A stretch of DNA of 64,000 nucleotides from Macrostomum lignano (GCA_002269645.1 NIVC01001622.1:62001-126000), one strand, 5' to 3'. Positions 17,920 to 57,264 are shown, counted from the stretch's first letter. Program-made: numbers and translations. Notes: a model not told the origin generated them from the sequence alone.

Positions 17920-17974
17920 GTTTGCGCTGAGTTTAATGTACTTTTTATAATGTGCATTAAATAATTCGTTACTG

Positions 17975-19365: not shown

Positions 19366-19467
19366 GCCTATAAATCAGTACTACAAAAATCCTTTTAAAA
19401 AGTTGTCATCGCAGATTGCCGCAGCTGTAATAATAATAAAAACATAACTCGAACCATCCGACCTTAG

Positions 19468-20247: not shown

Positions 20248-20277
20248 GTAGGCTTTGTCTTGTCTGGTTTAGGGTTG

Positions 20278-21090
20278 TACAATATCCAATAATAACATCC
20301 CCCTGTCACTGTACAATATCCAATAACAACACCCTGTCACTGTGCAATATCCAATAATAACAACCCCCTGCCACTGTGCAATATCCAATAATAACAACCC
20401 CCTGCCACTGTGCAATATCCAATAATAACAACCCCCTGCCACTGTGCAATATCCAACAACAACACCCTGTCACTGTGCAATATCCAATAATAACAACCCC
20501 CTGCCACTGTGCAATATCCAATAATAACACCCCCCTGCCACTGTGCAATATCCAATAATAACAACCCCCTGCCACTGTGCAATATCCAACAACAACACCC
20601 TGTCACTTTGCAATATCCAATAATAACAACCCCCTGCCACTGTACAATATCCAATAGCAACAACACCCTGTCACTGTGCAATATCCAACAACAACACCCT
20701 GTCACTGTACAATATCCAATAACAACACCCTGTCACTGTGCAATATCCAATAATAACAACCCCCTGCCACTGTGCAATATCCAACAACAACACCCTGTCA
20801 CTGTGCAATATCCAATAATAACAACCCCCTGCCACTGTGCAATATCCAATAATAACAACCCCCTGCCACTGTGCAATATCCAATAATAACAACCCCCTGC
20901 CACTGTGCAATATCCAACAACAACACCCTGTCACTTTGCAATATCCAATAATAACAACCCCCTGCCACTGTACAATATCCAATAGCAACAACACCCTGTC
21001 ACTGTGCAATATCCAACAACAACACCCTGTCACTGTGCAATATCCAACAACAACACCCTGTCACTGTGCAATATCCAACAACAACAACAA
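20278..21090 (+). repeat. 31-34-bp intronic minisatellite (TGTGCAATATCCAATAATAACAACCCCCTGCCAC)
   Basis: Fills liprin intron 4 (20248-21099) almost to the acceptor. Confidence 0.95.
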
Positions 21091-21099
21091 CATCTGCAG

Positions 21100-24623: not shown

Positions 24624-24666
<43 letters not shown>

Positions 24667-32112: not shown

Positions 32113-32147
32113 CACCGCTAATCCAGCACCCATCTCACCCACCCCAG

Positions 32148-36358: not shown

Positions 36359-37204
36359 TCACTTCTGGCCAGCCTGCACTTTGTACTCGAGCAGAGTGCG
36401 GAATTTCTTCGCGTCGCCCTCGGCATAGTTCGCGCACACGGCTACGCGACTGGCGCCTGGCTGGGCCGCCGCGGCGAGGCTAACCCGGCCCAGCCACTGA
36501 CCGGCGGCCTGCGACGACGGCTTCAGCGACGTCCAGGACTCGCCGCAGACAACGGAAACGGCTCGAGCCTCGGGCGCGATGAGGCTGAAGTCGACAGCGC
36601 GATCGCTGGCTGCCAGCTGACCGCTGGTTGGGCTGCGCAGCGAGCAGCCCTCAGACCAGGCGGCGAACTGCAGCGGGTAGCGCGGGCCGGCGCCGCTGCG
36701 AGCCAACCAGGCGCTGGAATCGGCGCTCCGCTTTGGTGCACAGATTAGCAGCTGCCACAGGTTGGCCAAATTGTCGTGCTTCTCAGTGGCTGGCAGGCCG
36801 AATATCACCAGCTTGTAGTAGCCGGGGGCTGGCAGCCACACGCGGAAGGAGGCGGCGCCGTCATTCTGCCGAATCTCCTGCAGCACGCAGTCGGAGCTGC
36901 AGGTGCTGCTCTGAGAGCCCGAGGCGGCCAAGCGGACCAGGTGCGCCGCTAGTCGCAGGGGCCGATCGGGTTTCATCGAGAACTCGAACGCGGGGTCGTC
37001 GCCGACTGGCTGTTTGCTTGAAACCAGCGGGTCCTCGTGCGAGGTGCACGCGAGGCCGAACTCGGCAGCCTTCTGCGTGCCGCCAAGGTGCCCAGGCGGC
37101 TGATGAAGCGCCTCGGAAGCGTCTGTGCCGCAGCGGCAGACCAGCAGAAGTTGCTGCACCAAGTGCAGCCGGTCCCCATCCTGGGGCCTGCCACCAGCGT
37201 ACAC
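36359..37204 (-). CDS. Hillarin/KY-like gene, last exon (C-terminal beta-sandwich repeats)
   Basis: VYAGG...FRVWLPAPGYYKLVIFG...VAVCANY...FRTLLEYKV, typical of the hillarin/KY C-terminus; acceptor TTTCAG, phase 0, giving LE|VYAG. Confidence 0.85.
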   Translation of the reverse strand: MYAGGRPQDGDRLHLVQQLLLVCRCGTDASEALHQPPGHLGGTQKAAEFGLACTSHEDPLVSSKQPVGDDPAFEFSMKPDRPLRLAAHLVRLAASGSQSSTCSSDCVLQEIRQNDGAASFRVWLPAPGYYKLVIFGLPATEKHDNLANLWQLLICAPKRSADSSAWLARSGAGPRYPLQFAAWSEGCSLRSPTSGQLAASDRAVDFSLIAPEARAVSVVCGESWTSLKPSSQAAGQWLGRVSLAAAAQPGASRVAVCANYAEGDAKKFRTLLEYKVQAGQK

Positions 37205-37865: not shown

Positions 37866-38062
37866 AAATTCTAACTAGAGAGAAGAAGACGGCAAGGTCA
37901 GACACCAACATACCTCGTGGGCATTCTACTCGTAGAATTCTGTTTCATATGCTGTTTCCGCTTCCTGCACCGCTTCTTTCTGATTAATCCTTGACTAACC
38001 CACAACAAAGCTTTCATACAAATTTAGGTCTATAAATAAATAATAAGTACTCAGCCGCTCAC

Positions 38063-39531
38063 CTCCAGAACGTGCAGGCCGTCTGTAGGCGGCAGCGGCC
38101 GCACCAGCAGGTGTCCGGCAGCCATCCGAACGATGCAGGATGCGCTATCCGCCAGCCTGCCAGCGGCCTGCTGCGCCTGCTGGTCGCAGCCGCGTAGCTT
38201 CACAACGTAGCGCAGGCGTTCGGCAGCGCGACTGGACAGCTTGAATCGGACATCCTCAGCCTGGCCGTCGGTCACCTCTACGATTGGCAGCGGCATGTCC
38301 GCGCCTTCGCCCGCCGTGACCGCCGTCAGATTGAAGCCGCCCATGGCGGACCAGTTGGCATCGGCAGGGCCGTAGCCGGAGGTCTGGCACTGGGGGAAGG
38401 ACGGCGCGGCTTGATCGACTTCCGCGTTGATTTGATACACGCAGACTGACTCGAACACGGCGCTCTGCTGTTGCTGCTTTTGGGCAGTCTGGGCGAGGTC
38501 TCTGGCGTAAATCGTTAGTTTCCAAGTTCCAGTGGAAGGTGGCCGCGCCGCCACCACAAGACAGGAGTAGCGCCTGTCGAACAGGTGCAAAACTCGGTGC
38601 TTGACTGAAGCTGCTTTAGCGGCGGTAGACTTGGATTCTGGGCTCAGAGTGGCGATGAAGCTCAGGCGGCCAGCCAGGCCCGGCGGGACGCCAATTCGGA
38701 TGATCAACGCCGGGGACAGAGGCGCCAGCTGCGGGTCCTCGTCAGCTGCGCCTGGCCGGCTGGAGCGCCACTGAATGGTCGATTCAGGATGCGACCGCAG
38801 CTCCAGGCCGTATTTAAAAAAGGCGTTTTTCACCTGCGCCAGGTTATTGAAGCGTGCGATTGTCAGCGGCTTCTCCAGCAGCTGCCAGCTGGCTCGGTCG
38901 GGAAAGTGGGTGAACACGAACTGGGCCGGCCTGGCCAAGAAGTAGAATTCATCCAGCTGCCTGTCGCCAGCCTCCTGCTGCTGTTTGCCGCCACTTCCAT
39001 AACCGCGCGCAGCCCAGAAGCTGTCAATCAGGCGCCAGCTGCCGTTGAGGCGGACGGCGTTCCACAGGTGCACGGCGTCGCCAATGGCCGGATCTCTCAG
39101 TCCGCCGCGCACTGAGCCTTGGACGAGCCGGCAGTCCAGGCCGAAGGCGCGGCACAGGAGCCGCAGCGCGACTGCCATCGCTGCGCGACCCTCGACGGCA
39201 GCGGAGAGCAGCGCCTCAGCGGATTGCGGCTCCCGCTGCACCGGACAGGCATCCGGAGTGGCCAGGCAGAGCCAGACGAAAGCGAGACGCAGCCGCTCCA
39301 TCGAGTCGGTGACGTTGGGCTGGCCAACCAGCTGCCAGACCAGCTCGCGTAGGTCCGACGGCTTTGTGCGGCCCTCAGCCAGTCTCTGCGCGTGAGCGTC
39401 CACCGCTGCCAACTGTTCCAGCGATGGCCGGTCAACTGCGGGCACGGCGTCTTGCTCCGGTTCCGTATCGGCGTCTTCTGCTAGCAGATTGCTTGGCAGC
39501 TTGAACTTTTTTGGTGGTTTGCTCGGCGTGA
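38063..39531 (-). CDS. Hillarin/KY-like gene, transglutaminase-like core exon
   Basis: LRLLCRAFGLDCRLVQG...HLWNAVRLNGSWRLIDSFWAARG...DEFYFLARPAQFVFTHFP...WQLLEKP...VKNAFFKYGL is the KY/hillarin/CYK3 TGc-fold signature; donor GAG|GTGAG; the 5' acceptor position is less certain. Confidence 0.9.
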
Positions 39532-39554
39532 CTGCAATTGTTTGGCACGGGGAT

Positions 39555-39825
39555 CGTGTACAAAAAGTCAATATTCGCATGGGTTGCGGGCACCCTTATA
39601 CACACGCTCACACAGGGTGTACATGTGATCTTTGACTCTCTAATCGTCAGGCATGTACTCTGTGCCTTGGGGGTTGGCCCTCAAGGCTGTGAATCGCATG
39701 ACGACCCCCTCCCCAGGGCGAATTTTCGTGCACGCAAGCTCCAAATGAATGCAGCCGCGCACGAAATCGAACCCGGGTCTCAGCTCGAGTGTCCGACACG
39801 ATAACCTCAGAGCTACACCAGCCCC
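39555..39825 (-). mobile_element. tRNA-derived SINE (non-CORE body)
   Basis: Head GGGGCTGGTGTAGCTC...CCGGGTTCGATTTC with A/B-box-like motifs but no acceptor-stem pairing; the body is homologous to 23391-23462; TGTACA lies at both flanks. Confidence 0.65.
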
Positions 39826-40018: not shown

Positions 40019-40085
40019 TCTCGTCAGCGCACTCTTGTAGGCAGGAGAAGACGGATGGAAAACTTTCAGAGGAGAATGCTTGGTC
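40019..40085 (-). CDS. Hillarin/KY-like gene, 67-nt linker exon (DQAFSSESFPSVFSCLQECADE)
   Basis: Strong acceptor CTTTAATTTCAG and donor GTAAGT; converts phase 0 to phase 1 exactly as needed between the flanking exons. Confidence 0.6.
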
Positions 40086-40178
40086 CTGAAATTAAAGAAA
40101 TTCTCCAGCGTTTTTTTTTCAATCCAAAAGCGCCTACCACCGAATGTACTTTGAAGAGTAAAAAAACTCCTCACTCAC

Positions 40179-43100
40179 CTCTTCGCCCATGTCACCAACT
40201 TGGAATCCTGAGTACCAGCCGGAGTAAGCCGACTGCGATAGAGACGTGGCGTGATGATGAATATTCTGGTTGAGCTCCTCAGCAACTGAGGCGTCAGACT
40301 TCACTTCTCCGAACATGAACAGCTCCCTGGCTGCCCGACGCCGTTTCTCATAAATATCCTCTTCCGGGTTGGACGCGGTGGAGCCCATTGTCCGAACTTT
40401 CTTCGTCTTCGACTGCTCCTCGATTTCTGTAGCACCCGATTTCTGTTCCTGGCTCTGCGACTCCGAGCTACCAGCTCCGCTGCCTTTTGACCTCCACCAG
40501 TAGCTGATGCTCAAGTACTTCGCTATGCCCTGCGATTCCTTGGTTTCTTCAGACGTCTCAGCTGTTTCAGTTTTCGATGCATCTACCTCGGTTTCCTCCG
40601 AAGTAACGTCTGACGCTTCGGTCTCCTGAGTTGACGTTTTGTAGATGGTTTTCTCCTGCAGAGTTGAGCGCCTTGTAGCCAGTCGGGAAGACATCTGAAT
40701 AGTAGTGTCCACTGAGGTATCGACTGAGATGGCTGTGCTGTCCATTGTAGTGGTTACATGCTCGTGAAGGGATTCAGATTGTCCCTGGTTAAAATCTCCA
40801 ATGAGCAGCTGAGATTCGTGAACAGATAGAGTAGAGTCAAAGTCTTGAAACTCAGTGGTCTCCTGAGTCTGCTCAAACTCAGTGGTCCCATCAGTCTGCT
40901 CGATCTCAGTGGTCCCCTGAGTCTGGTCGATCTCAGTGGTCTCTTCAGCCTGCTCGAACTCAGTGGTCTCTTCAGCCTGCTCGAACTCAGTGGTCTCTTC
41001 AGCCTGCTCGAACTCAGTGGTTCGAACTCGAACCTCAGTTTGCTCGAACTCAGTGGTCTCTTCAGCCTGCTCGAACTCAGTGGTCTCTTCAGCCTGCTCG
41101 AACTCAGTGGTTCGAACTCGAACCTCAGTTTGCTCAAACTCAGTGGTCTCTTCAGCCTGCTCGAACTCAGTGGTCTCTTCAGCCTGCTCGAACTCAGTGG
41201 TCTCTTCAGCCTGCTCGAACTCAGTGGTCTCTTCAGCCTGCTCGAACTCAGTGGTCTCTTCAGCCTGCTCGAACTCAGTGGTCTCCTGAGTCTGCTCGAA
41301 CTCAGTGGTCTCTTCAGCCTGCTCGAACTCAGTGGTCTCCTCAGTTTGCTCGAACTCAGTGGTCTCTTCAGCCTGCTCGAACTCAGTGGTCTCTTCAGCC
41401 TGCTCGAACTCAGTGGTCTCCTCAGTCTGCTCGAACTCAGTGGTCTCTTCAGCCTGCTCGAACTCAGTGGTCTCCTGAGTCTGCTCGAACTCAGTGGTCT
41501 CTTCAGTCTGGTCGATCTCAGTGGTCTCCTCAGTCTGCTCGAACTCAGTGGTCTCTTCAGTCTGGTCGATCTCAGTGGTCTCCTCAGTCTGCTCGAACTC
41601 AGTGGTCCCCTGAGTCCACTCGAACTCAGTGATCTCAGTGGGCTCCTGAGTCTGCTCGATTTCAGTGGTCTCCTCACTAGTCGCCATCTTTGTTTTCCTT
41701 TCTAGTTCGGTGTTGCCTTGAGTCGCACTTTCAAGTGCTTTGGATTTTCCTTTTCTCGACCGCTTCTTTTTGCGTCCTCCTGCCTGCTCTGATGCCGAAG
41801 CACCTTGTGATTGTTTTTCCTGCTCCCTCGCTCCAGACTTTCGCACCACAGTTGTCACTGTTTCCACTGTGGTCACGGTTTCTGTCCTCTGCTCAGCTTC
41901 CAGGGAGTCGCTTTGCCGGCTTGCCGAGTCAGTAGCGTCCAAAGACTTCGAAAAGTCGTTGCCCTTCTTTTTGATTCGCCGATAAGCCCACGAATCGGTG
42001 TATTTGGTCTCGCCAGCCTCCTCGTATTCCTCATCAGAAGTGATGATGCCTTCGTCAAATTGTGAGTCAGTGTCAATGCATCGAATGTATTTCTCTACAC
42101 TCGAAGTCTCCTCAATTGTCTGAGAAATTTGCTTCGTCTCCTCAGCTGTCCGGTTGATGTCTGTTTTAGTCTGCTGAATTTGTTTGTCTTCCTTCTGTCT
42201 GGTGGAAATTCCGCGCACCGTGGTTAGACTTTTGACATCAAACTGATTGGCATAGTGGCCAGTCAATGTTGAAATTTTTCTGTAGTCAGATTCAGCAGGC
42301 CATACACTGCCAATTTCAACCGTTTGTTTAGCTTTCGTTTCGGTAGCCGCTCCGATTTCACTCTCAGAAGCAGTCTCGACCTGTTTCGACGTTTCGATAG
42401 TAAGATATTCGGTCTCCAGAGACTCTTCGGTGGGTATGTTATCGGTGGATCTACGATGAAGCACTACGAAGGAGTCTGCCTCGTCTGCATCCCGTTTAGT
42501 CCTGACCGCAGATCCGATGAGGCCGGTCTCGTACCTGTCAGAGTCGGTCTCAATCTTTGCAATGGTAACGGTACTTCCGCTCTGAACTCTCCACTCTCCG
42601 GTCTGACTAACGACAGTCTTCTGAGTGACAGTGGTGGATGTCGTAGTCGTACTAGAGCTGGTGGTCGAAGCTTTGGATTCAAAACTTTCAACAGTGGCAA
42701 CGCCGCAAACTGCTCTGAGGCCTTCCGGATCAACTTGTCGAGCGTGATGACTTGTGAGCGACGATATCTGTCGGTAGTCGGCGACGGGAAGATCCCTTTC
42801 ACTCACTCTTGCAACCTTCTTATCGCCGTCAACAACAGAGCTACGGGAGCTTGTCTTTGTTGTTGATATTGAAGTCAGCGAAGTCGATGAAACGGGTTTA
42901 CCAGATTCGGTTGTTCGAGTTTCACTACCACCGGAGACAAAGACGGTTTTATTGGTTCCTGCAGCACCAGTTTTGTTTCTAAAGAAAATTTCTAAACTGT
43001 TTGAATCGCTTCTTCTAACGTAATGGCTAGCTAGGGTCGAAATAAAAACATAATTCGAAGCAGGCTTGAACACGTCTTCAGTACTAGCTGTCACATTCAG

Positions 43101-46100
43101 TTTAGAACACTTCTCTATGCTCCTGATTGCGTCAGAAGCCCGCTCAGTCCTATCAGAAGTATCAGTAGTCTTCTCAGTTGTCTCCTCAGTGGTCTGCTCG
43201 ATCTCAGGAGAAGTCTCAATGGTCTCCTCAGTGGTTTGCTCGATTTCCTGAGAAGTATCAATGGTCTCAGTTGTCTCCTCGGTGGTCTGCTCGATCTCCT
43301 GAGAAGTCTCAATGGTCTCCTCAGTTGTCTCCTCGGTGGTCTGCTCGATCTCCTGAGAAGTCTCAATGGTCTCCTCAGTTGTCTCCTCGGTGGTCTGCTT
43401 GATCTCCTGAGAAGTCTCAATGGTCTCCTCAGTGGTCTGCTCGATCTCCTGAGAAGTCTCAATGGTCTCCTCGGTTGTCTGACCAATGTCAGTTGTATCT
43501 ATGGTCTGCTCAATGGTCTGCCCGATAATCTGCTGTGTCCCAGAGTTCGTACTGGTGACCCTTCCTGTCTCTGTAGTCACTGAGTCCACTATTCGGTTTC
43601 TTTTAATTTTGTAGATTTCCGTCTCGAAGTAAAAGTCGCTGCTTTCAACGGACTTCTCTGAGCCGCTAACTGTTGTTAGCAGCTCAGTCGATTCTTCGAT
43701 GGTTCGAGAACCTCTGCACCGGAACTCTCCGAAAGATTCTGTCTCTCTGCCAGTGGATGTGCCGGTTATAACGTAGGCATAGCCAGCGACTTCAGAATCG
43801 TCCGAGTTGACTGAGGCATGCGTTGATGCTGTTGTCCTTTTTCTGGACTCCTCAACGGTTTTCTCGATCTCCTGAGACGTCTCAATTGTCTCCTCAGTTG
43901 TCTCCTCGGTGGTCTGCTCGATCTCAGTAGTCTCAATTGTCTCCTCAGTAGTCTCCTCAGTGGTCTGCTCAATCTCCTGAGAAGTCTCAATGGTCTCCTC
44001 AGTTGTCTCCTCGGTGGTCTGCTCGATCTCCTGAGACGTCTCAATGGTCTCCTCAGTTGTCTCCTCGGTGGTCTGCTCGATCTCCTGAGAAGTCTCAATG
44101 GTCTCCTCAGTTGTCTCCTCGGTGGTCTGCTCGATCTCCTGAGACGTCTCAATGGTCTCCTCAGTGGTCTGCTCGATTTCAGTAGTCTCAATGGTCTCCT
44201 CAGTTGTCTCCTCGGTGGTCTGCTCGATCTCCTGAGAAGTCTCAATGGTCTCCTCAGTTGTCTCCTCAGTGGTCTGCTCGATCTCCTGAGACGTCTCAAT
44301 GGTCTCCTCAGTTGTCTCCTCGGTGGTCTGCTCGATCTCCTGAGAAGTCTCAATGGTCTCCTCAGTTGTCTCCTCGGTGGTCTGCTCGATCTCCTGAGAC
44401 GTCTCAATGGTCTCCTCAGTGGTCTGCTCGATCTCAGTAGTCTCAATGGTCTCCTCAGTTGTCTCCTCAGTGGTCTGGTCGATCTCCTGAGAAGTCTCAA
44501 TGGTCTCCTCAGTTGTCTCCTCAGTGGTCTGCTCGATCTCCTGACAAGTCTCAATGGTCTCCTCAGTTGTCTCCTCGGTGGTCTGCTCGATCTCCTGAGA
44601 AGTCTCAATGGTCTCCTCAGTTGTCTCCTCGGTGGTCTGCTCGATCTCCTGAGAAGTCTCAATGGTCTCCTCAGTTGTCTCCTCGGTGGTCTGCTCGATC
44701 TCCTGAGAAGTCTCAATGGTCTCCTCAGTTGTCTCCTCGGTGGTCTGCTCGATCTCCTGAGAAGTCTCAATGGTCTCTTTAGTTGTCTCCTCGGTGCTCT
44801 GCTCGATCTCCTGAGAAGTCTCAATGGTCTCCTCAGTGGTCTGCTCGATCTCCTGAGAAGTCTCAATGGTCTCCTCGGTTGTCTGACCAATGTCAGTTGT
44901 ATCTATGGTCTGCTCAATGGTCTGCCCGATAATCTGCTGTGTCCCAGAGTTCGTACTGGTGACCCTTCCTGTCTCTGTAGTCACTGAGTCTACTATTCGG
45001 TTTCTTTTAATTTTGTAGATTTCCGTCTCGAAGTAAAAGTCGCTGCTTTCAACGGACTTCTCTGAGCCGCTAACTGTTGTTAGCAGCTCAGTCGATTCTT
45101 CGATGGTTCGAGAACCTCTGCACCGGAACTCTCCGAAAGATTCTGTCTCTCTGCCAGTGGATGTGCCGGTTATAACGTAGGCATAGCCAGCGACTTCAGA
45201 ATCGTCCGAGTTGACTGAGGCATGCGTTGATGCTGTTGTCCTTCTTCTGGACTCCTCAACGGTTTTCTCGATCTCCTGAGACGTCTCAATTGTCTCCTCA
45301 GTTGTCTCCTCGGTGGTCTGCTCGATCTCAGTAGTCTCAATTGTCTCCTCAGTAGTCTCCTCAGTGGTCTGCTCAATCTCCTGAGAAGTCTCAATGGTCT
45401 CCTCAGTTGTCTCCTCGGTGGTCTGCTCGATCTCCTGAGAAGTCTCAATGGTCTCCTCAGTTGTCTCCTCGGTGGTCTGCTCGATCTCCTGAGACGTCTC
45501 AATTGTCTCCTCAGTTGTCTCCTCAGTGGTCTGCTCGATCTCCTGAGACGTCTCAATTGTCTCCTCAGTTGTCTCCTCAGTGGTCTGCTCGATCTCAGTA
45601 GTCTCAATTGTCTCCTCAGTAGTCTCCTCAGTGGTCTGCTCAATCTCCTGAGAAGTCTCAATGGTCTCCTCAGTTGTCTCCTCGGTGGTCTGCTCGATCT
45701 CCTGAGAAGTCTCAATGGTCTCCTCAGTGGTCTGCTCGATCTCAGTAGTCTCAATGGTCTCCTCAGTAGTCTCCTCGGTGGTCTGCTCGATCTCCTGAGA
45801 AGTCTCAATGGTCTCCTCAGTTGTCTCCTCGGTGGTCTGCTCGATCTCCTGAGAAGTCTCAATGGTCTCCTCAGTGGTCTGCTCGATCTCAGTAGTCTCA
45901 ATGGTCTCCTCAGTAGTCTCCTCGGTGGTCTGCTCGATCTCCTGAGAAGTCTCAATGGTCTCCTCAGTTGTCTCCTCGGTGGTCTGCTCGATCTCCTGAG
46001 AAGTCTCAATGGTCTCCTCAGTTGTCTCCTCGGTGGTCTGCTCGATCTCCTGAGAAGTCTCAATGGTCTCCTCAGTGGTCTGCTCGATCTCCTGAGAAGT

Positions 46101-49100
46101 CTCAATGGTCTCCTCAGTGGTCTGCTCGATCTCCTGAGAAGTCTCAATGGTCTCTTCGGTTGTCTGACCAATGTCAGTTGTATCTATGGTCTGCTCAATG
46201 GTCTGCCCGATAATCTGCTGTGTCCCAGAGTTCGTACTGGTGACCCTTCCTGTCTCTGTAGTCACTGAGTCTACTATTCGGTTTCTTTTAATTTTGTAGA
46301 TTTCCGTCTCGAAGTAAAAGTCGCTGCTTTCAACGGACTTCTCTGAGCCGCTAACTGTTGTTAGCAGCTCAGTCGATTCTTCGATGGTTCGAGAACCTCT
46401 GCACCGGAACTCTCCGAAAGATTCTGTCTCTCTGCCAGTGGATGTGCCGGTTATAACGTAGGCATAGCCAGCGACTTCAGAATCGTCCGAGTTGACTGAG
46501 GCATGCGTTGATGCTGTTGTCCTTTTTCTGGACTCCTCAACGGTTTTCTCGATCTCCTGAGACGTCTCAATTGTCTCCTCAGTTGTCTCCTCGGTGGTCT
46601 GCTCGATCTCAGTAGTCTCAATTGTCTCCTCAGTAGTCTCCTCAGTGGTCTGCTCAATCTCCTGAGAAGTCTCAATGGTCTCCTCAGTTGTCTCCTCGGT
46701 GGTCTGCTCAATCTCCTGAGACGTCTCAATGGTCTCCTCAGTTGTCTCCTCAGTGGGCTGCTCAATCTCCTGAGAAGTCTCAATGGTCTCCTCAGTTGTC
46801 TCCTCGGTGGTCTGCTCGATCTCCTGAGACGTCTCAATGGTCTCCTCAGTTGTCTCCTCGGTGGTCTGCTCGATCTCCTGAGAAGTCTCAATGGTCTCCT
46901 CAGTTGTCTCCTCGGTGGTCTGCTCGATCTCCTGAGAAGTCTCAATGGTCTCCTCAGTGGTCTGCTCGATCTCAGTAGTCTCAATGGTCTCCTCAGTAGT
47001 CTCCTCGGTGGTCTGCTCGATCTCCTGAGAAGTCTCAATGGTCTTCTCAGTTGTCTCCTCAGTGGTCTGCTCGATCTCCTGAGAAGTCTCAATGGTCTCC
47101 TCAGTGGTCTCCTTGGTTGTCTGCTCGATCTCCTGAGAAGTCTCAATGGTCTCCTCAGTGGTCTGCTCGATCTCCGCAGAAGTCTCAATGGTCTCCTCAG
47201 TTGTCTCCTTGGTTGTCTGCTCGATCTCCTGAGAAGTCTCAATGGTCTCCTCAGTGGTCTGCTCGATCTCCTGAGAAGTCTCAATGGTCTCCTCAGTGGT
47301 CTGCTGAAACTCCCGAGAAGTCTCAATGGTCTCCTCAGTTGTCTCCTCGGTGGTCTGCTCGATCTCCTGAGAAGTCTTAATGGTCTCCTCAGTTGTCTCC
47401 TCGGTGGTCTGCTCGATCTCCTGAGAAGTCTCAATGGTCTCCTCAGTTGTCTCCTCGGTGGTCTGCTCGATCTCCTGAGAAGTCTCAATGGTCTCCTCAG
47501 TTGTCTCCTCAGTGGTCTGCTCGATCTCCTGAGAAGTCTCAATGGTCTCCTCAGTGGTCTGCTCGATCTCCTCAGAAGTCTCAATGGTCTCCTCAGTTGT
47601 CTCCTTGGTTGTCTGCTCGATCTCCTGAGAAGTCTCAATGGTCTCCTCAGTTGTCTCATCAGTGGTCTGCTCGATCTCCTGAGAAGTCTCAATGGTCTCC
47701 TCAGTGGTCTGCTCGATCTCCTGAGAAGTCTCAATGGTCTCTTCGGTTGTCTGACCAATGTCAGTTGTATCTATGGTCTGCTCAATGGTCTGCCCGATAA
47801 TCTGCTGTGTCCCAGAGTTCGTACTGGTGACCCTTCCTGTCTCTGTAGTCACTGAGTCTACTATTCGGTTTCTTTTAATTTTGTAGATTTCCGTCTCGAA
47901 GTAAAAGTCGCTGCTTTCAACGGACTTCTCTGAGCCGCTAACTGTTGTTAGCAGCTCAGTCGATTCTTCGATGGTTCGAGAACCTCTGCACCGGAACTCT
48001 CCGAAAGATTCTGTCTCTCTGCCAGTGGATGTGCCGGTTATAACGTAGGCATAGCCAGCGACTTCAGAATCGTCCGAGTTGACTGAGGCATGCGTTGATG
48101 CTGTTGTCCTTTTTCTGGACTCCTCAACGGTTTTCTCGATCTCCTGAGACGTCTCAATTGTCTCCTCAGTTGTCTCCTCGGTGGTCTGCTCGATCTCAGT
48201 AGTCTCAATTGTCTCCTCAGTAGTCTCCTCAGTGGTCTGCTCAATCTCCTGAGAAGTCTCAATGGTCTCCTCAGTTGTCTCCTCGGTGGTCTGCTCAATC
48301 TCCTGAGACGTCTCAATGGTCTCCTCAGTTGTCTCCTCAGTGGGCTGCTCAATCTCCTGAGAAGTCTCAATGGTCTCCTCAGTTGTCTCCTCGGTGGTCT
48401 GCTCGATCTCCTGAGACGTCTCAATGGTCTCCTCAGTTGTCTCCTCGGTGGTCTCCTCGATCTCCTGAGACGTCTCAATGGTCTCCTCAGTTGTCTCCTC
48501 GGTGGTCTGCTCGATCTCCTGAGAAGTCTCAATGGTCTCCTCAGTTGTCTCCTCGGTGGTCTGCTCGATCTCCTGAGAAGTCTCAATGGTCTCCTCAGTG
48601 GTCTGCTCGATCTCAGTAGTCTCAATGGTCTCCTCAGTAGTCTCCTCGGTGGTCTGCTCGATCTCCTGAGAAGTCTCAATGGTCTCCTCAGTTGTCTCCT
48701 CAGTTGTCTGCTCGATCTCCTGAGAAGTCTCAATGGTCTCCTCAGTGGTCTGCTGATCTCCTGAGAAGTCTCAATGGTCTCCTCAGTGGTCTGCTCGAGA
48801 AGTCTCAATGGTCTCCTCAGTTGTCTCCTTGGTTGTCTGCTCGATCTCCTGAGAAGTCTCAATGGTCTCCTCAGTGGTCTGCTCGATCTCCTGAGAAGTC
48901 TCAATGGTCTCCTCAGTGGTCTGCTGAAACTCCCGAGAAGTCTCAATGGTCTCCTCAGTTGTCTCCTCGGTGGTCTGCTCGATCTCCTGAGAAGTCTCAA
49001 TGGTCTCCTCAGTGGGTCTCAATGGTCTCCTCAGTGGTCTGCTCGATCTCCTGAGAAGTCTCAATGGTCTCCTCAGTGGTCTGCTCGATCTCCTTAGAAG

Positions 49101-52100
49101 TCTCAGTTGTCTCCTCGGTGGTCTGCTCGATCTCCTGAGAAGTCTCAATGGTCTCCTCAGTGGTCTGCTCGATCTCCTGAGAAGTCTCAATGGTCTCTTC
49201 GGTTGTCTGACCAATGTCAGTTGTATCTATGGTCTGCTCAATGGTCTGCCCGATAATCTGCTGTGTCCCAGAGTTCGTACTGGTGACCCTTCCTGTCTCT
49301 GTAGTCACCGAGTCTACTATTCGGTTTCTTTTAATTTTGTAGATTTCCGTCTCGAAGTAAAAGTCGCTGCTTTCAACGGACTTCTCTGAGCCGCTAACTG
49401 TTGTTAGCAGCTCAGTCGATTCTTCGATGGTTCGAGAACCTCTGCACCGGAACTCTCCGAAAGATTCTGTCTCTCTGCCAGTGGATGTGCCGGTTATAAC
49501 GTAGGCATAGCCAGCGACTTCAGAATCGTCCGAGTTGACTGAGGCATGCGTTGATGCTGTTGTCCTTTTTCTGGACTCCTCAACGGTTTTCTCGATCTCC
49601 TGAGACGTCTCAATTGTCTCCTCAGTTGTCTCCTCGGTGGTCTGCTCGATCTCAGTAGTCTCAATTGTCTCCTCAGTAGTCTCCTCAGTGGTCTGCTCAA
49701 TCTCCTGAGAAGTCTCAATGGTCTCCTCAGTTGTCTCCTCGGTGGTCTGCTCGATCTCCTGAGAAGTCTCAATGGTCTCCTCAGTTGTCTCCTCGGTGGT
49801 CTGCTCGATCTCCTGAGAAGTCTCAATGGTCTCCTCAGTTGTCTCCTCGGTGGTCTGCTCAATCTCTTGAGAAGTCTCAATTGTCTCCTCAGTAGTCTCC
49901 TCGGTGGTCTGCTCGATCTCAGTAGTCTCAATGGTCTCCTCAGTTGTCTCCTCGGTGGTCTGCTCGATCTCTTGAGACGTCTCAATGGTCTCCTCAGTTG
50001 TCTCCTCGGTGGTCTGCTCGATCTCCTGAGACGTCTCAATGGTCTCCTCAGTTGTCTCCTCGGTGGTCTGCTCGATCTCTTGAGAAGTCTCAATGGTCTC
50101 CTCAGTAGTCTCCTCAGTGGTCTGCTCGATCTCCTGAGAAGTCTCAATGGTCTCCTCAGTTGTCTCCTCGGTGGTCTGCTCGATCTCCTGAGACGTCTCA
50201 ATGTTCTCCTCAGTTGTCTCCTCGGTGGTCTGCTCAATCTCTTGAGAAGTCTCAATGGTCTCCTCGGTGGTCTGCTCGATCTCCTGAGAAGTCTCAATGG
50301 TCTCCTCAGTGGTCTGCTCGGTGGTCTGCTCGATCTCCTGAGAAGTCTCAATGGTCTCCTCAGTTGTCTCCTCAGTGGTCTGCTCGATCTCCTGAGAAGT
50401 CTCAATGGTCTCCTCAGTTGTCTCCTCGGTGGTCTGCTCGATCTCCTGAGAAGTCTCAATGGTCTCCTCAGTTGTCTCCTCGGTGGTCTGCTCAATCTCT
50501 TGAGAAGTCTCAATGGTCTCCTCGGTGGTCTGCTCGATCTCCTGAGAAGTCTCAATGGTCTCCTCAGTGGTCTGCTCGGTGGTCTGCTCGATCTCCTGAG
50601 AAGTCTCAATGGTCTCCTCAGTTGTCTCCTTGGTTGTCTGCTCGATCTCCTGAGAAGTCTCAATGGTCTCCTCAGTTGTCTCATCAGTGGTCTGCTCGAT
50701 CTCCTGAGAAGTCTCAATGGTCTCCTCAGTGGTCTGCTCGATCTCCTGAGAAGTCTCAATGGTCTCTTCGGTTGTCTGACCAATGTCAGTTGTATCTATG
50801 GTCTGCTCAATGGTCTGCCCGATAATCTGCTGTGTCCCAGAGTTCGTACTGGTGACCCTTCCTGTCTCTGTAGTCACTGAGTCTACTATTCGGTTTCTTT
50901 TAATTTTGTAGATTTCCGTCTCGAAGTAAAAGTCGCTGCTTTCAACGGACTTCTCTGAGCCGCTAACTGTTGTTAGCAGCTCAGTCGATTCTTCGATGGT
51001 TCGAGAACCTCTGCACCGGAACTCTCCGAAAGATTCTGTCTCTCTGCCAGTGGATGTGCCGGTTATAACGTAGGCATAGCCAGCGACTTCAGAATCGTCC
51101 GAGTTGACTGAGGCATGCGTTGATGCTGTTGTCCTTTTTCTGGACTCCTCAACGGTTTTCTCGATCTCCTGAGACGTCTCAATTGTCTCCTCAGTTGTCT
51201 CCTCGGTGGTCTGCTCGATCTCAGTAGTCTCAATTGTCTCCTCAGTAGTCTCCTCAGTGGTCTGCTCAATCTCCTGAGAAGTCTCAATGGTCTCCTCAGT
51301 TGTCTCCTCGGTGGTCTGCTCGATCTCCTGAGAAGTCTCAATGGTCTCCTCAGTGGTCTGCTCGATCTCCTGAGAAGTCTCAATGGTCTCCTCAGTGGTC
51401 TGCTCGATCTCCTGAGAAGTCTCAATGGTCTCCTCAGTGGTCTGCTCGATCTCCTGAGAAGTCTCAATGGTCTCCTCAGTTGTCTCCTCAGTGGTCTGCT
51501 CGATCTCCTGAGAAGTCTCAATGGTCTCCTCAGTTGTCTCCTCGGTGGTCTGCTCGATCTCCTGAGAAGTCTCAATGGTCTCCTCAGTGGTCTGCTCGAT
51601 CTCAGTAGTCTCAATGGTCTCCTCAGTAGTCTCCTCGGTGGTCTGCTCGATCTCCTGAGAAGTCTCAATGGTCTCCTCAGTTGTCTCCTCAGTGGTCTGC
51701 TCGATCTCCTGAGAAGTCTCAATGGTCTCCTCAGTGGTCTCCTTGGTTGTCTGCTCGATCTCCTGAGAAGTCTCAATGGTCTCCTCAGTGGTCTGCTCGA
51801 TCTCCTCAGAAGTCTCAATGGTCTCCTCAGTTGTCTCCTTGGTTGTCTGCTCGATCTCCTGAGAAGTCTCAATGGTCTCCTCAGTTGTCTCCTCGGTGGT
51901 CTGCTCGATCTCCTGAGAAGTCTCAATGGTCTCCTCAGTTGTCTCCTCGGTGGTCTGCTCGATCTCCTGAGAAGTCTCAATGGTCTCCTCAGTTGTCTCC
52001 TCAGTGGTCTGCTCAATCTCTTGAGAAGTCTCAATGGTCTCCTCAGTTGTCTCCTCAGTGGTCTGCTCTATCTCCTGAGAAGTCTCAATGGTCTCCTCAG

Positions 52101-54059
52101 TTGTCTCCTCGGTGGTCTGCTCAATCTCCTGAGAAGTCTGAATCTTCTCCTGAGTTGCCCGTTCAGTCTCCTCAGTAGTCTCAGTGCACTCTTCAGTTGT
52201 GTGCTCGGTTTCTTCAGCGGTCTGGATCGTAGAAGCTTGTTTTGTTGTTTCGGCATACTCTTCTTTGCTCTCCGAATTTGTTTTGCGATAGCGCTTCTTC
52301 TCTGGGTCTGTAGTAGTTATTGTAGATTGAATTTCGATGGCAACCAGATCCTGATTAACTGGAAGAAATTCGGTTTCAAGCGACTCTTCAGTCGGACTAT
52401 CCCTTGCTGTTCTTTTGTGAAGCACAGTCAGTTCAGATTTCTCCTCGTTTGTTCGAACGGCGCTCACGCTGAGATCGGCAGTTGTAGTTTTCGTAGCAGC
52501 TGTGCCAATTGATGACTCTGCATTCTTTTCGGACTGCATTGTGACGATAGTCGTGGTTTTGATTGTAGTTTTTGTTGAGTTTTCATCCCAAGAATTTTTA
52601 TCAAGCTGGCTGTTCTCATGCTCAATGGTCTTTTCAAATGTGGATTTTGTGACTGCATCTTCTGAGGTAAGAACTGCTGCCTGTTTTTCCGTCACGTCTA
52701 CCTCCAAGTAGCGGCACACCCAAGTTGAGCAGGCGGTAGTGCTTTCCTCTGTGACATACTTGACAGAATGGTTGGCTGGAATGAATAGATCGGCCCAGAG
52801 AGCATTGATGTCCACACAGTTCGGCGCCTTACTGTCCATTTTTGAGTAGCGATCGATCTCGCCAGCGAATGATTTAGAAAACCAAGTTCCTCCCAAGGCT
52901 GGTTCAACAGACTTTTGTAGGATGTGCTCACTCTCTGCAGTTGAAAAGGCAGATTTTTGCCCTTTCATGGCCGAATTTGAAGTAGACTTTTTCACGACTT
53001 TAGAGCCCCTTGCTTCTCCTTTTCCAACAGTCGTCACAATTGTTCGAGTCTTCACGGTTGTCAGATAGGTGGAGGTTCGCTCTGCGTCTTGAGCGACGTC
53101 GGTAGACTGAGACGTTGCAATTGAAGCCGGGTATCCAGAGTCCTCAGTCAGCTCATCCACCATTTCAATCGTAGCGTCACTTTCCGCACCATCTGAGCTT
53201 CGTTCCAGAGCTCCGTCAGCTCGCAGTTCTTCAGTCAGTTCCGAGGTCTCGACCATTGTTGCATCAGTCAACGTGTCATCGATTTCGCTACCATCAATCG
53301 TCAGGTCGGTTGTAACATCTGTTTCGTCCGCTTCGGTGCGAATGCCCTGCTTCTTTACCACAACTGTCACATTTCCAGTGGTAATTACTTCACATTCAGA
53401 GCTTGTCTGATTAGAATTTCCAGCTACCTTGGTAGACAGCGAGTCAGTAGTTTCGGAATCAATAGTGTCTTTTGTGACTACGGTGGGGCAGACAGTCACC
53501 GATGGTTCGAGTTGGTAAATATTTAGCTTCACCATGCTATTATCTGTCGATTCGTCCGTCTTTCCGGTGCCAACATTCTGATCGAATGATTCATTGACAT
53601 CTTGTTCTGTCACAAATACGAATTCATCGGTAATCGATTGGTCCTTCTGTGCTCTTACAGATTGGGTTGTAGAAATTTTCTGCGTCGAATCTTCACTCTG
53701 TTCCGTCACTTCCTTTGTTCCTATTATTTGCGTTCGCTCGGATCCACCGACAGAAATATCATCATTGCCTTCTTTCATGAATTCGATTGTCATCTCCGTT
53801 ACTAGTTGCTCCTCAGTCCGCGGCGAATTCTCTGTGATTCCTTTCACAGTCACTCTAGTGCTTGCTTCGCCTGTTCGTGACTCAGAAGCGGCCGAAGCAA
53901 TGTTGGTCGTGATGATAGTCTCCTCTGTCACTTCTTTCGTTTTAGTAGTGGATGATAGTTCAGTGGTAGATTTGCGCTGCGAACTCTCCATAGTAGATGT
54001 TGAGGTGATTGTACTTTCTAAAAATGGTTCGCCAGTAGCATATTTCCATAACTTGCGCA
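40179..54059 (-). CDS. Hillarin/KY-like gene, giant ~13.9-kb exon encoding an acidic E/T/Q/I repeat region (frameshifts at ~48750-49020)
   Basis: ORFs 54060-49009 (1683 aa) and ~48750-40134 are continuous in content; donor GAG|GTGAGT at 40178; phase-1 acceptor at 54059 or 54017 fits exon 1. Confidence 0.75.
43150..52170 (-). repeat. Coding higher-order tandem array: six 128-codon spacer blocks separated by runs of 13/14/18-codon E/T repeats
   Basis: The spacer marker GGACTCCTCAACGG (+ strand) occurs at ~43845, 45249, 46530, 48117, 49573 and 51142. Confidence 0.95.
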
Positions 54060-54302
54060 CTTACGTAATAATGAGTAGGAAACAATCTACCGTATTTTTA
54101 GCTTTAAAACTTATCTTACCGTTTCTTTTTCCGTTAGTAACACATGTAGGTGAATATTCACGCAAAACAGTATGGATGGAACGATGTATAAAGAGGGGGG
54201 TTTCACAAACTCGAAATTTCAAAACGTCGAAAGCACCTTCTTTCACAAGATCGAAATTTCACTAGGTCGAAATTTCGAGTGAAAGCACCCCTATAAAGAT
54301 AA

Positions 54303-56636: not shown

Positions 56637-57264
56637 CTGAGGAGCCCTTAGAGATTGCTTCTCCGTGCAAATTGCGCTTGATGACGAAGCGATAGGCGCT
56701 GCTGGTGCTACCGAAGCACTTGCCGCCCGAAACGGACACCGAGCTGTCGAATTCTTGCTCGTTGTAGCCTTCGGAGGCTTCCGTCGAATACCGGTCGATG
56801 CAGCGACCTTCGACGACTCGCTCGTCTACAAACTCGACCTCGCCTTCGCCTTCGCCTTCGGGTAGTAGTACCTCGTACTTTTGCCCGAACGTCTCGTCGA
56901 CGGAGTTTGACGAAGTTGACTCGTCCTCGTCTAGGAGTGGGCACGCCTCGGCCACCGTCGCCTCGACTGTAATCGACGTTCTCACCGGCTTGTCACTTGT
57001 TGCCGATTCGACAGTCTCAGTCCTGGTCTCAGCCAATTCCTGCTGGCTCTCCTCGCCCTTCTCAGTGACTACCATGGTCACGTCATCGGACAGAATGCGC
57101 TCGTGGATTACAACTCCGCTTTGTCCGATTGTTTCAGCCGACTTCTGCTCCTGCCAGATCGCCTTCGATTGGCTCTCCGACTGCTGCTTCGGCTGCTGCT
57201 CTTGACGTCTTTGCTTCTGCTGCGACAGCTTCTGCTGTCGCGTCTCTCTCTGCCTATCAGCCAT
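56637..57264 (-). CDS. Probable first (or upstream) coding exon of the giant hillarin/KY-like gene
   Basis: 209-codon E/S/T/V/Q-rich non-repetitive ORF with the same composition as the giant exon; donor G|GTAAGA, phase 1; the true start may lie further upstream. Confidence 0.6.

What the first reader, a model, noticed from the sequence alone, without database searches (positions are those of the whole stretch)
43150..52170. Two-level protein repeat: six near-identical 128-aa spacers separated by variable runs of 13/14/18-aa acidic units
The 128-aa block (KTVEESRKRTT...GYAYVITG...FGEFRCRGS...DFYFETEIYKIKRNRIVDS...DTTDIGQ) recurs six times, with periods of about 1569, 1456, 1587, 1281 and 1404 bp. 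Between blocks lie TIETSQEIEQTTEETTEE (18 aa), TIETSQEIEQTTEE (14 aa) and TIETTEIEQTTEE (13 aa) units. Outside one damaged patch all length changes are multiples of 3, which suggests selection for reading frame. The spacers hold nearly all the aromatic, basic and Cys residues, so they look like periodic binding or cross-linking nodes on an acidic string. Copy number is probably polymorphic.
Basis: partly seen in the sequence, partly recalled or inferred. Interest (0 to 1): 0.7.

Follow-up and report, generated by a model that had tools for sequence, protein, structure and literature searches.

The report
Two-level acidic repeat in flatworm hillarin gene
The repeat is real and protein-coding: it fills most of a 13.8-kb exon of a roughly 5,600-residue hillarin/KY-family gene of the flatworm Macrostomum lignano, where long Glu/Thr arrays with the sequence pattern of an amphipathic alpha-helix are interrupted six times by a nearly identical 128-residue block.

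Summary
Observation confirmed. On the minus strand, six 384-nt (128-aa) blocks start at 51159, 49590, 48134, 46547, 45266 and 43862. The periods are exactly those reported, and the blocks differ by 0-2 nt. Between them lie arrays of 18-, 14-, 13- and also 17-aa units. The arrays total 2,237 aa, are 98.6% E/T/I/Q/S and carry a net charge of -829.

The sequence codes for protein. Among 82 aligned units, 91 of 109 differences fall on third codon positions (88 synonymous, 21 not). 122 of 125 unit lengths are multiples of 3. Only this frame crosses the blocks.

The three exceptions are deletions of 20, 8 and 1 nt within about 260 bp. They are more likely assembly errors than real lesions, but real decay is not excluded.

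The organism is Macrostomum lignano. A UniProt gene model joins the end of this exon to transglutaminase-like and KY Ig-like exons that are homologous to leech Hillarin. The modelled N-terminus has no signal peptide.

New finding: the 18-aa unit spans exactly five helical turns, with one Thr/Ser/Ile face and one Glu/Gln face (12 of 20,000 shuffles match). AlphaFold predicts long helices that break at the 13-aa units.

Function is inferred: an acidic rod or spacer with periodic nodes, attached to a cytoskeleton-associated module. Module number and polymorphism are untested.

The parts
56637..57264 (-). Candidate first coding exon. It starts at ATG 57264 (MADRQRETRQQK...) and has no hydrophobic signal peptide. 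The donor is CAG|GTAAGA, phase 1.
   Evidence: ORF and DNA. The last G joins AA at 54017 to give GAA, in frame with the giant exon. Inferred from sequence; there is no transcript evidence.
40179..54017 (-). Giant exon of about 13.8 kb, about 4,620 codons once the 29 deleted bases are allowed for. It contains an N-terminal unique part, the two-level repeat, a C-terminal unique part, a 9-aa repeat and a tail.
   Evidence: ORFs 49009..54060 and 40134..47852. Acceptor tttttag| ends at 54018 and the donor AG|GTGAGT lies at 40179/40178. The last 272 aa are matched at 99.6% by gene model P0001.
43152..52157 (-). The two-level repeat itself: seven acidic arrays (A0-A6, 2,237 aa) and six 128-aa blocks.
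50776..51159 (-). Block 1 (128 aa)
49207..49590 (-). Block 2 (one synonymous difference)
47751..48134 (-). Block 3 (identical to blocks 1 and 4)
46164..46547 (-). Block 4
44883..45266 (-). Block 5 (K8R)
43479..43862 (-). Block 6 (one synonymous difference)
48754..49016 (-). Damaged patch in array A2: deletions of 20, 8 and 1 nt relative to the unit consensus. Read literally, the frame ends at the TGA at 49009-49011. The paralogous stretch of array A3 is intact.
   Evidence: A2 and A3 are 99.2% identical where they align.
40851..41636 (-). Second, simpler repeat in the same exon: TEETTEFEQ (27 nt), about 28.5 copies.
   Evidence: It has no 100-degree periodicity; its best angle is 120 degrees and weak.
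40217..40217 (-). One extra T relative to the sequence behind UniProt A0A1I8FY85 (GGC TGG TAC versus GGC GGT ACT). As assembled, it puts the giant exon out of frame with the downstream hillarin/KY exons.
40033..40085 (-). 53-nt mini-exon (TKHSPLKVFHPSSPAYK) that links the giant exon to the TGc exon in gene model P0001.
38063..39531 (-). Exon encoding a transglutaminase-like core plus a KY-type Ig-like domain.
   Evidence: Pfam PF01841 (26 bits, cut-off 23) and PF23265 (56.7 bits, cut-off 27). 33% identity to leech Hillarin with E = 7e-73. Alignment.
36359..37180 (-). Last coding exon, a second KY-type Ig-like domain ending in the stop codon. The exon start is approximate.
   Evidence: Pfam hit. 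P0001 residues 791-1061 match 37174..36362 at 100%.

Best explanation
This is a real, protein-coding, two-level tandem repeat inside one giant exon of a Macrostomum lignano gene. The C-terminus of that gene is a hillarin/KY-type module: a transglutaminase-like domain that appears to lack the nucleophile Cys, followed by KY Ig-like domains.

Shown: coding on the minus strand, purifying selection on the unit sequence, near-identity of the blocks, the species, and linkage of the end of the exon to the hillarin-like exons.

Inferred, origin: the supra-repeats (block plus array) arose by tandem duplication. Unequal crossing-over and gene conversion keep them alike, while unit number drifts in whole units.

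Inferred, mechanism: the protein is intracellular, because the modelled N-terminus has no signal peptide. The hillarin module would tie it to a cytoskeletal or cortical structure. Each array is a strongly acidic amphipathic alpha-helix built on an 18-residue, five-turn repeat, with a Thr/Ser/Ile stripe on one side and Glu/Gln on the other. The helices are probably stable only with counter-ions or a basic partner. The 13- and 17-aa units act as kinks. The six 128-aa blocks are non-helical nodes that carry the only basic and aromatic motifs, including RC..-(about 35 aa)-YK.IKR. Together this would make a segmented rod, spacer or spring several hundred nm long.

Inferred, frame breaks: the three deletions in array A2 and the extra T at 40217 are more likely assembly indel errors than real lesions.
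For: Repeat anatomy.

Coding:
- 15, 3 and 91 differences at codon positions 1, 2 and 3, and 88 synonymous to 21 non-synonymous against 34:128 possible.
- ORFs in the other frames stop at the blocks.
- Gaps between arrays are multiples of 3.

Species and gene:
- The exhaustive HMMER search gives P0001 (94% identity) as top hit. P0001 is UniRef100_A0A1I8FY85 from M. lignano. Leech Hillarin Q964C7 is also among the best hits.
- P0001 starts inside the TEETTEFEQ repeat of this exon and runs into the TGc exons.
- Exon 1 joins in frame and has no signal peptide.

Helix:
- Fourier amplitude is 5.41 at 3.60 residues and at most 1.97 at the other harmonics. Only 12 of 20,000 shuffles reach it. The best angle is 100 degrees in all four arrays tested.
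- AlphaFold on 150 aa of array A4 gives pLDDT 90.7 and helices that break at residues 87-90 and 141-142, exactly where the two 13-aa units begin.
- The weak PDB matches are mostly helical bundles, helical repeats or coiled coils.

Blocks: low-confidence model. The bipartite motif is shared with exon 1 and the C-terminal unique part and occurs nowhere else in six frames of the window.

Error reading:
- The three deletions cluster within about 260 bp of a 13.8-kb exon that is otherwise clean.
- Where P0001 departs from the window in the TGc exon, its peptide is exactly the window's +1 frame. The departure begins at an A-run, and there the window matches the homologues.
- The published M. lignano assemblies are PacBio-based, redundant and 15% simple or tandem repeat (PMC5730564).

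Family context: animal hillarin, LTD-1 and yeast Cyk3 are described as catalytically inactive transglutaminase-like proteins linked to septins, actin-like patterns and cytokinesis (PMC3718969). KY is linked to filamin C in muscle (PMC6078408).
Against: - No transcript, read or expression data could be consulted. P0001 covers only the last 272 aa of the giant exon, so linkage of the T/E array itself rests on the continuous ORF.
- Taken literally, the window's copy is broken four times and would yield a truncated product of about 1,880 aa without the hillarin module.
- A net charge of about -0.37 per residue with almost no basic residues, and 45% beta-branched residues, argue against a stable isolated helix.
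- AlphaFold tends to give confident helices for Glu-rich low-complexity sequence. One of its five models scored only 28.5.
- The 13-, 14- and 17-aa units rotate the Thr stripe, so it is not continuous along an array.
- The block shows no significant overall similarity to the flanks: Smith-Waterman scores lie below the shuffled mean. The shared short motif was defined after seeing the data.
- No relatives of the repeat part were found, but those searches are uninformative.
Confidence: 0.6

Rival explanations
1. The arrays are a permanently disordered polyanion: an entropic spring, a brush-like spacer, or a high-capacity Ca2+/cation buffer. The blocks are short sticky islands. This is essentially the first reader's picture.
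For: Net charge of -829 over 2,237 aa made of only five residue types. 45% of residues are Thr or Ile. No Pfam family matches.
Against: The 3.6-residue amphipathic periodicity is too strong to explain by composition (12 of 20,000 shuffles). A purely disordered spacer has no need for it. AlphaFold's best model has pLDDT 90.7.
Confidence: 0.3
2. This copy is a decaying duplicate, that is, a young pseudogene. The three deletions in A2 and the extra T at 40217 are real. The signs of constraint only record its recent functional past. M. lignano carries many redundant gene copies.
For: There are four frame-breaking differences in about 17 kb of coding sequence. Deletions of 20 and 8 nt are not the typical 1-nt long-read error. 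[quoted passage not shown]
Against: Three of the four lesions sit within about 260 bp, while the remaining 13.5 kb of exon has no stop or shift. There is no excess of non-synonymous change. The independent gene model P0001 has its own frame error at an A-run where the window is correct, which shows that indel errors occur in assemblies of this genome.
Confidence: 0.3
3. Assembly expansion: the true locus has fewer block-plus-array modules, and some were created by mis-joining long reads in a repeat.
For: The blocks are nearly identical. Exact identity runs up to about 800 nt between copies 3 and 4. The genome is known to be hard to assemble. The damaged patch could mark a bad join.
Against: Every array has its own order of unit types and its own private point variants. 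Pairwise identity between arrays is 96.3-99.2% with different gap patterns. No module is a plain copy of another, and the whole region (9 kb) lies within the length of one long read.
Confidence: 0.12
4. A secreted, mucin-like or adhesion-related polyanion, for example the unknown negatively charged releasing factor proposed to neutralise the Lys/Arg repeats of the adhesive protein Mlig-ap1.
For: It is Thr-rich, hugely negative and from the right species. The release model calls for a negatively charged agent (PMC6410801).
Against: The modelled N-terminus and the first in-frame Met of the giant exon have no signal peptide. The C-terminus belongs to an intracellular cytoskeleton-associated family. 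The arrays have 0.1% Pro, unlike mucin PTS regions. The paper predicts a small molecule and reports low protein density in the releasing vesicles.
Confidence: 0.03
5. A non-coding minisatellite that merely happens to be open in one frame. The window is full of minisatellites.
For: There are more than 25 non-coding tandem arrays elsewhere in the window.
Against: The third-position bias and the 88:21 synonymous excess. One frame stays open through six non-repetitive 128-aa blocks and through 1.8 kb and 3 kb of unique flanks. The region is spliced to conserved domains in a UniProt gene model.
Confidence: 0.01

Closest known systems
Hillarin (Hirudo medicinalis Q964C7), D-hillarin, C. elegans LTD-1 and vertebrate KY: the transglutaminase-like plus KY Ig-like family
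   Same: The C-terminal roughly 760 aa encoded at 39531-36359 have the Transglut_core and Ig-like_KY domains. They align with leech Hillarin at 33% identity, E = 7e-73. As in the relatives, His and Asp are kept but no Cys sits at the nucleophile position (which column is the nucleophile is my reading of the TGc motif).
   Different: Leech Hillarin and the other top hits have two such modules in 1,200-1,700 aa. Here only one module lies in the window, preceded by about 4,800 aa of mostly repetitive acidic sequence. No relative examined has the T/E units or the 128-aa block. Only P0001, P0005 and the four proteins aligned were read.
Elastic PEVK / Glu-rich segments of titin and the invertebrate titin-like proteins (from general knowledge, not tested here)
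   Same: A very long tandem array of short acidic units, inside a giant protein that is tied to the cytoskeleton. Copy number is variable and there is super-repeat organisation.
   Different: The composition differs: almost no Pro, Val or Lys. No Ig or Fn3 domains flank it. It is one exon rather than many small ones. It has helical periodicity rather than a polyproline/coil character.
Gel-forming mucins: PTS repeat regions interrupted by CysD domains (from general knowledge)
   Same: The same two-level logic: long Thr-rich low-complexity arrays interrupted at intervals by a conserved domain of about 110-130 aa, thought to act as an interaction node.
   Different: No signal peptide, no Pro, one Cys per block, no vWD domains, an acidic rather than a glycan-bearing composition, and an intracellular-type C-terminus.
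Coiled coils and helical rods with non-heptad periodicity (7+11 = 18 residues per 5 turns), and designed acidic 'E-coil' helices (from general knowledge)
   Same: The unit is 18 residues, exactly five turns. The 14-aa unit is two heptads with T, T, I and T at the a/d positions. AlphaFold predicts long helices. The weak PDB matches are mostly designed helical bundles, helical repeats and coiled coils.
   Different: The stripe is Thr/Ser with a single Ile, not Leu/Ile/Val. Both flanking faces are acidic, so self-pairing should be repulsive. No partner is known.
Mlig-ap2, the adhesive protein of the same species (PMC6410801)
   Same: A giant M. lignano protein whose centre consists of dozens of near-identical tandem repeats (46 repeats of 255 or 221 aa). 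This shows that such arrays are expressed and functional in this animal.
   Different: Mlig-ap2 is secreted and has vWD, TIL, LDL-receptor and TSP1 domains. Its repeats are one-level and long, and it is not acidic T/E.

Membership tests
Hillarin / KY family | Transglutaminase-like core domain | tested here: met
   PF01841 at 26.0 bits (cut-off 23), residues 115-186 of ORF 38051..39580.
Hillarin / KY family | KY-type Ig-like domain(s) after the core | tested here: met
   PF23265 at 56.7 bits (cut-off 27) in ORF 38051..39580 and at 31.3 bits in ORF 36359..37204.
Hillarin / KY family | Sequence homology to named members | tested here: met
   Leech Hillarin Q964C7 at E = 7.3e-73, 33% identity; alignment.
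Hillarin / KY family | Two tandem modules, as in leech Hillarin | tested here: not met
   tblastn of two-module relatives maps both of their modules onto the single module at 39.5-36.4 kb. Nothing matches at 54-64 kb. A first module beyond the window's end cannot be excluded. The M. lignano paralogue P0007 also has one module.
Hillarin / KY family | The repeat exon and the module belong to one transcript | tested here: inconclusive
   Gene model A0A1I8FY85 joins the last 272 aa of the giant exon to the module. It is a prediction, it is 5'-truncated, and the window has an extra T at 40217 that breaks this link.
Titin-type PEVK / elastic segment | Pro/Glu/Val/Lys-rich units flanked by Ig/Fn3 domains | tested here: not met
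   The arrays have P 0.1%, V 0.0% and K 0.6%. Pfam finds no domain in the flanks.
Mucin PTS + CysD architecture | Signal peptide, Pro/Thr/Ser repeats, multi-Cys CysD domains, vWD domains | tested here: not met
   Hydrophilic N-terminus, no Pro, one Cys per block, no Pfam domains.
Alpha-helical rod / coiled coil | 3.5-3.67-residue periodicity of a distinct stripe | tested here: met
   The peak is at exactly 3.60 residues. 12 of 20,000 shuffles reach it, and the best angle is 100 degrees in arrays A1, A3, A4 and A5.
Alpha-helical rod / coiled coil | Predicted helix | tested here: met
   AlphaFold single-sequence model with mean pLDDT 90.7 and helices at 2-86 and 91-140. Caveat: the method is known to favour helices for Glu-rich repeats.
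Alpha-helical rod / coiled coil | Hydrophobic core positions that allow self-association | tested here: not met
   The stripe is T, T, T, I, T, T, S, T, and the rest is Glu/Gln.
Non-coding minisatellite | No codon-position bias and no conserved frame | tested here: not met
   Differences fall 15, 3 and 91 at codon positions 1, 2 and 3, and the frame stays open through blocks and flanks.

The most novel reading that the evidence does not exclude
The arrays are a previously undescribed kind of structural element: polyanionic alpha-helices hundreds of residues long with an exact 18-residue, five-turn repeat and a hydroxyl (Thr/Ser) stripe. They would fold or pair only with cations or with a basic helical partner, as a natural giant 'E-coil'. 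Six identical nodes and a hillarin anchor would then make a switchable, segmented molecular ruler or spring. In the boldest version, the partner is one of the Lys/Arg-repeat proteins of this animal.
Probability: 0.12. Interest if true: 0.65.

Novelty: new variant of a known kind. Interest (0 to 1): 0.4.

Why it matters
Hillarin, KY, LTD-1 and Cyk3 form a poorly understood family of inactive transglutaminase-like proteins tied to septins, actin-like structures, Z-discs and cytokinesis. A family member carrying about 4,800 residues of N-terminal extension would be an extreme natural variant. It may show what the module anchors.

The five-letter, exactly five-turn amphipathic acidic unit is a clean natural test case for whether polyanionic helices with a Thr stripe fold, and with what partner.

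M. lignano is open to RNAi, in situ hybridisation and transgenesis, so the function can be tested. On the practical side, the locus flags four probable indel errors, or else a decaying duplicate, in the assembly. It is also a good marker for repeat-number variation between lines.

If the arrays turn out to be ordinary disordered low-complexity sequence, this is one more giant repeat protein, of modest interest.

Tried and rejected
- All three word-indexed protein searches returned nothing: the KY-like ORF, the C-terminal unique part, and the N-terminal unique part plus array plus block. Yet a 94%-identical M. lignano protein is in the collection. Those negatives are therefore uninformative, and I could not learn whether the T/E units or the block occur in other species.
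- Pfam found no family for the block, the arrays, the 9-aa repeat, the unique flanks or the tail. Exon 1 gave only weak hits below the curated cut-offs. The PDB sequence search of the block found nothing significant.
- I suspected that the block is a diverged copy of modules in the unique flanks. Whole-block Smith-Waterman scores against exon 1, the N-terminal and the C-terminal unique parts are below the mean of shuffled blocks. Only a short bipartite motif survives, and I chose it after seeing the data.
- The first uncorrected BLAST self-comparison gave only composition-driven alignments.
- AlphaFold on the block was low-confidence, so I did not run a fold search on it.
- I looked for a first hillarin module upstream of the giant exon and found none in the window.
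- The look-up of encoding contigs has no record of P0001.
- Rfam and tRNA scans of the window were empty.
- Pfam hits on ORFs at 28805-30550, 31460-32527 and 2461-3381 (for example U79_P34, Gp5_C, Hexapep) have zero stretches that pass on their own and lie on minisatellites. I regard them as artefacts.

Full report
**Observation**

The coding strand is minus. Two long ORFs, 49009..54060 and 40134..47852, carry the repeat. The block KTVEESR...DTTDIGQ is 384 nt long.

The six copies differ at three sites only: one K8R change and two synonymous third-position changes. Exact identity extends at least 162 nt on the 5' side of every block, and runs to about 800 nt in total between copies 3 and 4.

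The seven arrays (A0-A6) parse into units of 18, 14 and 13 aa as described. There is also a 17-aa unit, which always precedes the final half-unit before a block. Tandem Repeats Finder sees one 54-nt array over 43863-52157.

**Is it coding?**

Yes, on three lines of evidence.
- Among 82 in-register 18-aa units, the 109 differences from consensus fall 15, 3 and 91 on codon positions 1, 2 and 3. They split 88 synonymous to 21 non-synonymous, where random single changes would be 34:128. These counts are cells, not independent events. Even so, nearly all frequent variants are synonymous third-position changes.
- 122 of 125 unit intervals are 39, 42, 51, 54 or 84 nt. Gaps between paralogous arrays are multiples of 3 (the single -1/+13 pair is an alignment split of a 12-nt gap).
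- The other frames are open only across arrays and stop at the blocks. The E/T frame runs through the blocks and through 1.8 kb and 3 kb of non-repetitive flank.

I count only about five independent in-frame indels, so the codon-position pattern is the stronger evidence.

**The damaged patch**

Between blocks 2 and 3 the frame moves 0>1>2>1. The cause is three deletions relative to the unit consensus:
- 20 nt at about 49016/49015
- 8 nt at about 48797/48796
- 1 nt at 48755/48754

They total 29 nt, and restoring them makes the interval a multiple of 3. All three lie within about 260 bp. The paralogous stretch of array A3 is intact, and A2 and A3 are 99.2% identical where aligned.

**Whose gene is it?**

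The window is from an animal. It has splice sites, a Liprin-alpha exon on the plus strand, and very many minisatellites.

Downstream on the minus strand, ORF 38051..39580 carries Transglut_core and Ig-like_KY domains. ORF 36359..37204 carries another Ig-like_KY domain.

An exhaustive HMMER search with the first ORF gave a top hit, P0001, at 94% identity. Hits at about 33% identity included leech Hillarin. P0001 is UniRef100_A0A1I8FY85, a 'TGc domain-containing protein' of Macrostomum lignano. Outside frame-shifted stretches it matches the window at 99.6-100%. The window is therefore M. lignano, either the same locus or a near-identical duplicate.

P0001 begins inside the TEETTEFEQ repeat of the giant exon (window 41033). 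It continues through a 53-nt mini-exon (40085-40033) into the TGc exon (from 39531) and the last exon (to 36362). So the giant exon and the hillarin-like module are modelled as one gene.

Upstream, an ORF starting at ATG 57264 ends at a CAG|GTAAGA donor (exon end 56637). Its phase joins exactly to the acceptor at 54018/54017. Its N-terminus, MADRQRETRQQK..., is hydrophilic, so there is no signal peptide.

The predicted product is about 5,600 aa:

| Part | Approximate length |
|---|---|
| Exon 1 | 209 aa |
| Giant exon | about 4,620 aa |
| Mini-exon | about 17 aa |
| Hillarin-like module | about 760 aa |

Only one hillarin-type module is present in the window, whereas the leech protein and other relatives have two.

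**Error or lesion?**

Relative to P0001, the window has one extra T at 40217. As assembled, this puts the giant exon out of frame with the TGc exons.

Conversely, P0001 is frame-shifted within the TGc exon. Its odd peptide is exactly the window's +1 frame, starting at an A-run, and there the window agrees with homologues.

Near-perfect substitution identity together with scattered indels is the signature of assembly error. The published assemblies of this genome are PacBio-based, highly redundant, and 15% simple or tandem repeat (PMC5730564).

I therefore favour error for the four frame breaks, at roughly 60:40. Deletions of 20 and 8 nt are not typical single-base errors, and a decaying duplicate is a real alternative.

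**What the repeat looks like as protein**

The arrays total 2,237 aa. Their composition is E 37.6%, T 33.1%, I 11.8%, Q 10.8% and S 5.3%, with a net charge of -829. The blocks hold 48 of 50 aromatic, 90 of 107 basic and 6 of 7 Cys residues of the repeat region.

On a helical wheel, residues at 20-160 degrees are T, T, T, I, T, T, S, T. Residues at 180-360 degrees are all E or Q, plus one I.
- The Fourier amplitude is 5.41 at 3.60 residues and at most 1.97 at every other harmonic.
- Only 12 of 20,000 composition-preserving shuffles reach this value.
- All four long arrays tested peak at 100 degrees.
- The 14-aa unit is two heptads with T, T, I and T at the a/d positions.

AlphaFold, run on a single sequence of 150 aa from array A4, gives mean pLDDT 90.7. 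Its helices break at residues 87-90 and 141-142, exactly where the two 13-aa units begin. The weak PDB sequence matches are mostly to designed helical bundles, helical repeats and coiled coils.

Against a stable helix stand the extreme charge, the 45% beta-branched residues, AlphaFold's known liking for Glu-rich helices, and one poor model out of five.

The block, predicted together with its flanking units, gave only pLDDT 38.5 with some strand character. It matches no Pfam family or PDB sequence significantly.

**Relation of the block to the rest of the protein**

Overall similarity is not significant. One bipartite motif does recur, though I defined it after seeing the data: RC[IR][DG], then 33-37 aa, then Y[KR]x(0-2)[IV]K[KR]. 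It occurs in exon 1, in every block and in the C-terminal unique part, and nowhere else in the six frames of the window.

A segment VLH[KR]R..PTEESLETE[FY]L lies just before the array (52425) and again in the C-terminal part (42464). There it continues as ...LTIETSKQVE, which resembles the unit TIETSQEIE and may be its source (inference).

**Most likely mechanism (inferred)**

I propose an intracellular giant scaffold.
- The hillarin/KY module ties it to a cytoskeletal or cortical structure. The family is described as catalytically inactive and linked to septins, actin-like patterns and cytokinesis (PMC3718969), and to filamin C in muscle (PMC6078408).
- The arrays form acidic amphipathic helical segments of about 50-90 aa, kinked at the 13- and 17-aa units. 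They are probably stabilised by cations or a basic partner.
- The blocks act as non-helical nodes carrying the only basic and aromatic motifs.
- If fully helical, the arrays would span roughly 335 nm (0.15 nm per residue).

The supra-repeats arose by tandem duplication. A2 and A3 share the rare variants SREFQQ and QPTEE. Unequal exchange and gene conversion would keep them homogeneous.

**Rivals**

The rivals I considered are:
- a permanently disordered polyanion;
- a decaying duplicate;
- assembly expansion, which is unlikely because every array has its own unit order and private variants;
- a secreted adhesion-release polyanion, which is unlikely given no signal peptide, an intracellular-type C-terminus, and a published model that predicts a small molecule (PMC6410801);
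- a non-coding minisatellite, which is excluded.

**Novelty and verdict**

This is a real, coding, higher-order repeat. In kind it is familiar: giant repeat proteins evolving in concert.

Two things are unusual. It is attached to a hillarin-family module, and its unit is a five-letter, exactly five-turn amphipathic acidic helix signature. I rate it a new variant of a known kind, with interest about 0.4.

Module number, polymorphism, expression and the helix itself all remain to be tested.

Noticed in passing
window 40851-41636 (-): A second coding repeat in the same giant exon: TEETTEFEQ (27 nt), about 28.5 copies, with two VRVRTTEFEQ variants. Unlike the 18-aa unit, it has no 100-degree helical periodicity.
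   Followed up: partly
window 43052, 42776, 42284 (-): Three copies of a motif [SA][ND]Y..IS.L..H[YH] (SNYVFISTLASHY, ADYRQISSLTSHH, SDYRKISTLTGHY) in the unique part after the array. It is found nowhere else in six frames of the window.
   Followed up: partly
window 52425 and 42464 (-): The segment VLH[KR]R..PTEESLETE[FY]L occurs just before the array and again after it. The second copy continues as LTIETSKQVE, a possible ancestor of the TIETSQEIE unit.
   Followed up: partly
window 40217 (-) and 38341-38497 (-): There are single-base indel differences between the window and the sequence behind UniProt A0A1I8FY85. The window has an extra T at 40217. The UniProt model is frame-shifted from an A-run near 38480, where the window agrees with homologues.
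   Followed up: yes
window 16746-21546 (+): Liprin-alpha exons on the opposite strand (PF25526 at 96.9 bits for ORF 19594..20292), interleaved with minisatellites.
   Followed up: no
window 1-446 and 15923-16419: The same 20-nt minisatellite (TGGTGGGCGCCCCTGTCTTT and its reverse complement) forms two arrays in inverted orientation, 15.5 kb apart. They may be the ends of a large mobile element.
   Followed up: no
window 24658-25125, 37406-37679, 63810-64000: An 80-nt tandem repeat family (…CATTGGCTGAGCTAG…GGGCCTG.CCCCTAGGCTGAG…) recurs at three places on both strands. One copy lies in the intron between the two hillarin-module exons.
   Followed up: no
window 1689-4532, 17977-19366, 28793-30512, 31260-32112, 58228-58852: There are very large non-coding arrays: an 18-nt unit x155, a 31-nt unit x47, a 30-nt unit x57, (GTCAGTCA)x107 and a perfect (CTGA)x156. 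They create long spurious ORFs and spurious Pfam hits (for example U79_P34, Gp5_C, Hexapep).
   Followed up: partly
window 38051-39580 (-), protein residues about 130-190: In the transglutaminase-like core, the His (HLWNAV) and Asp (LIDSFW) positions are conserved. The stretch where a nucleophile Cys would sit reads GRAAMAV, and GxTTYA in the relatives. This is consistent with a non-catalytic domain.
   Followed up: partly
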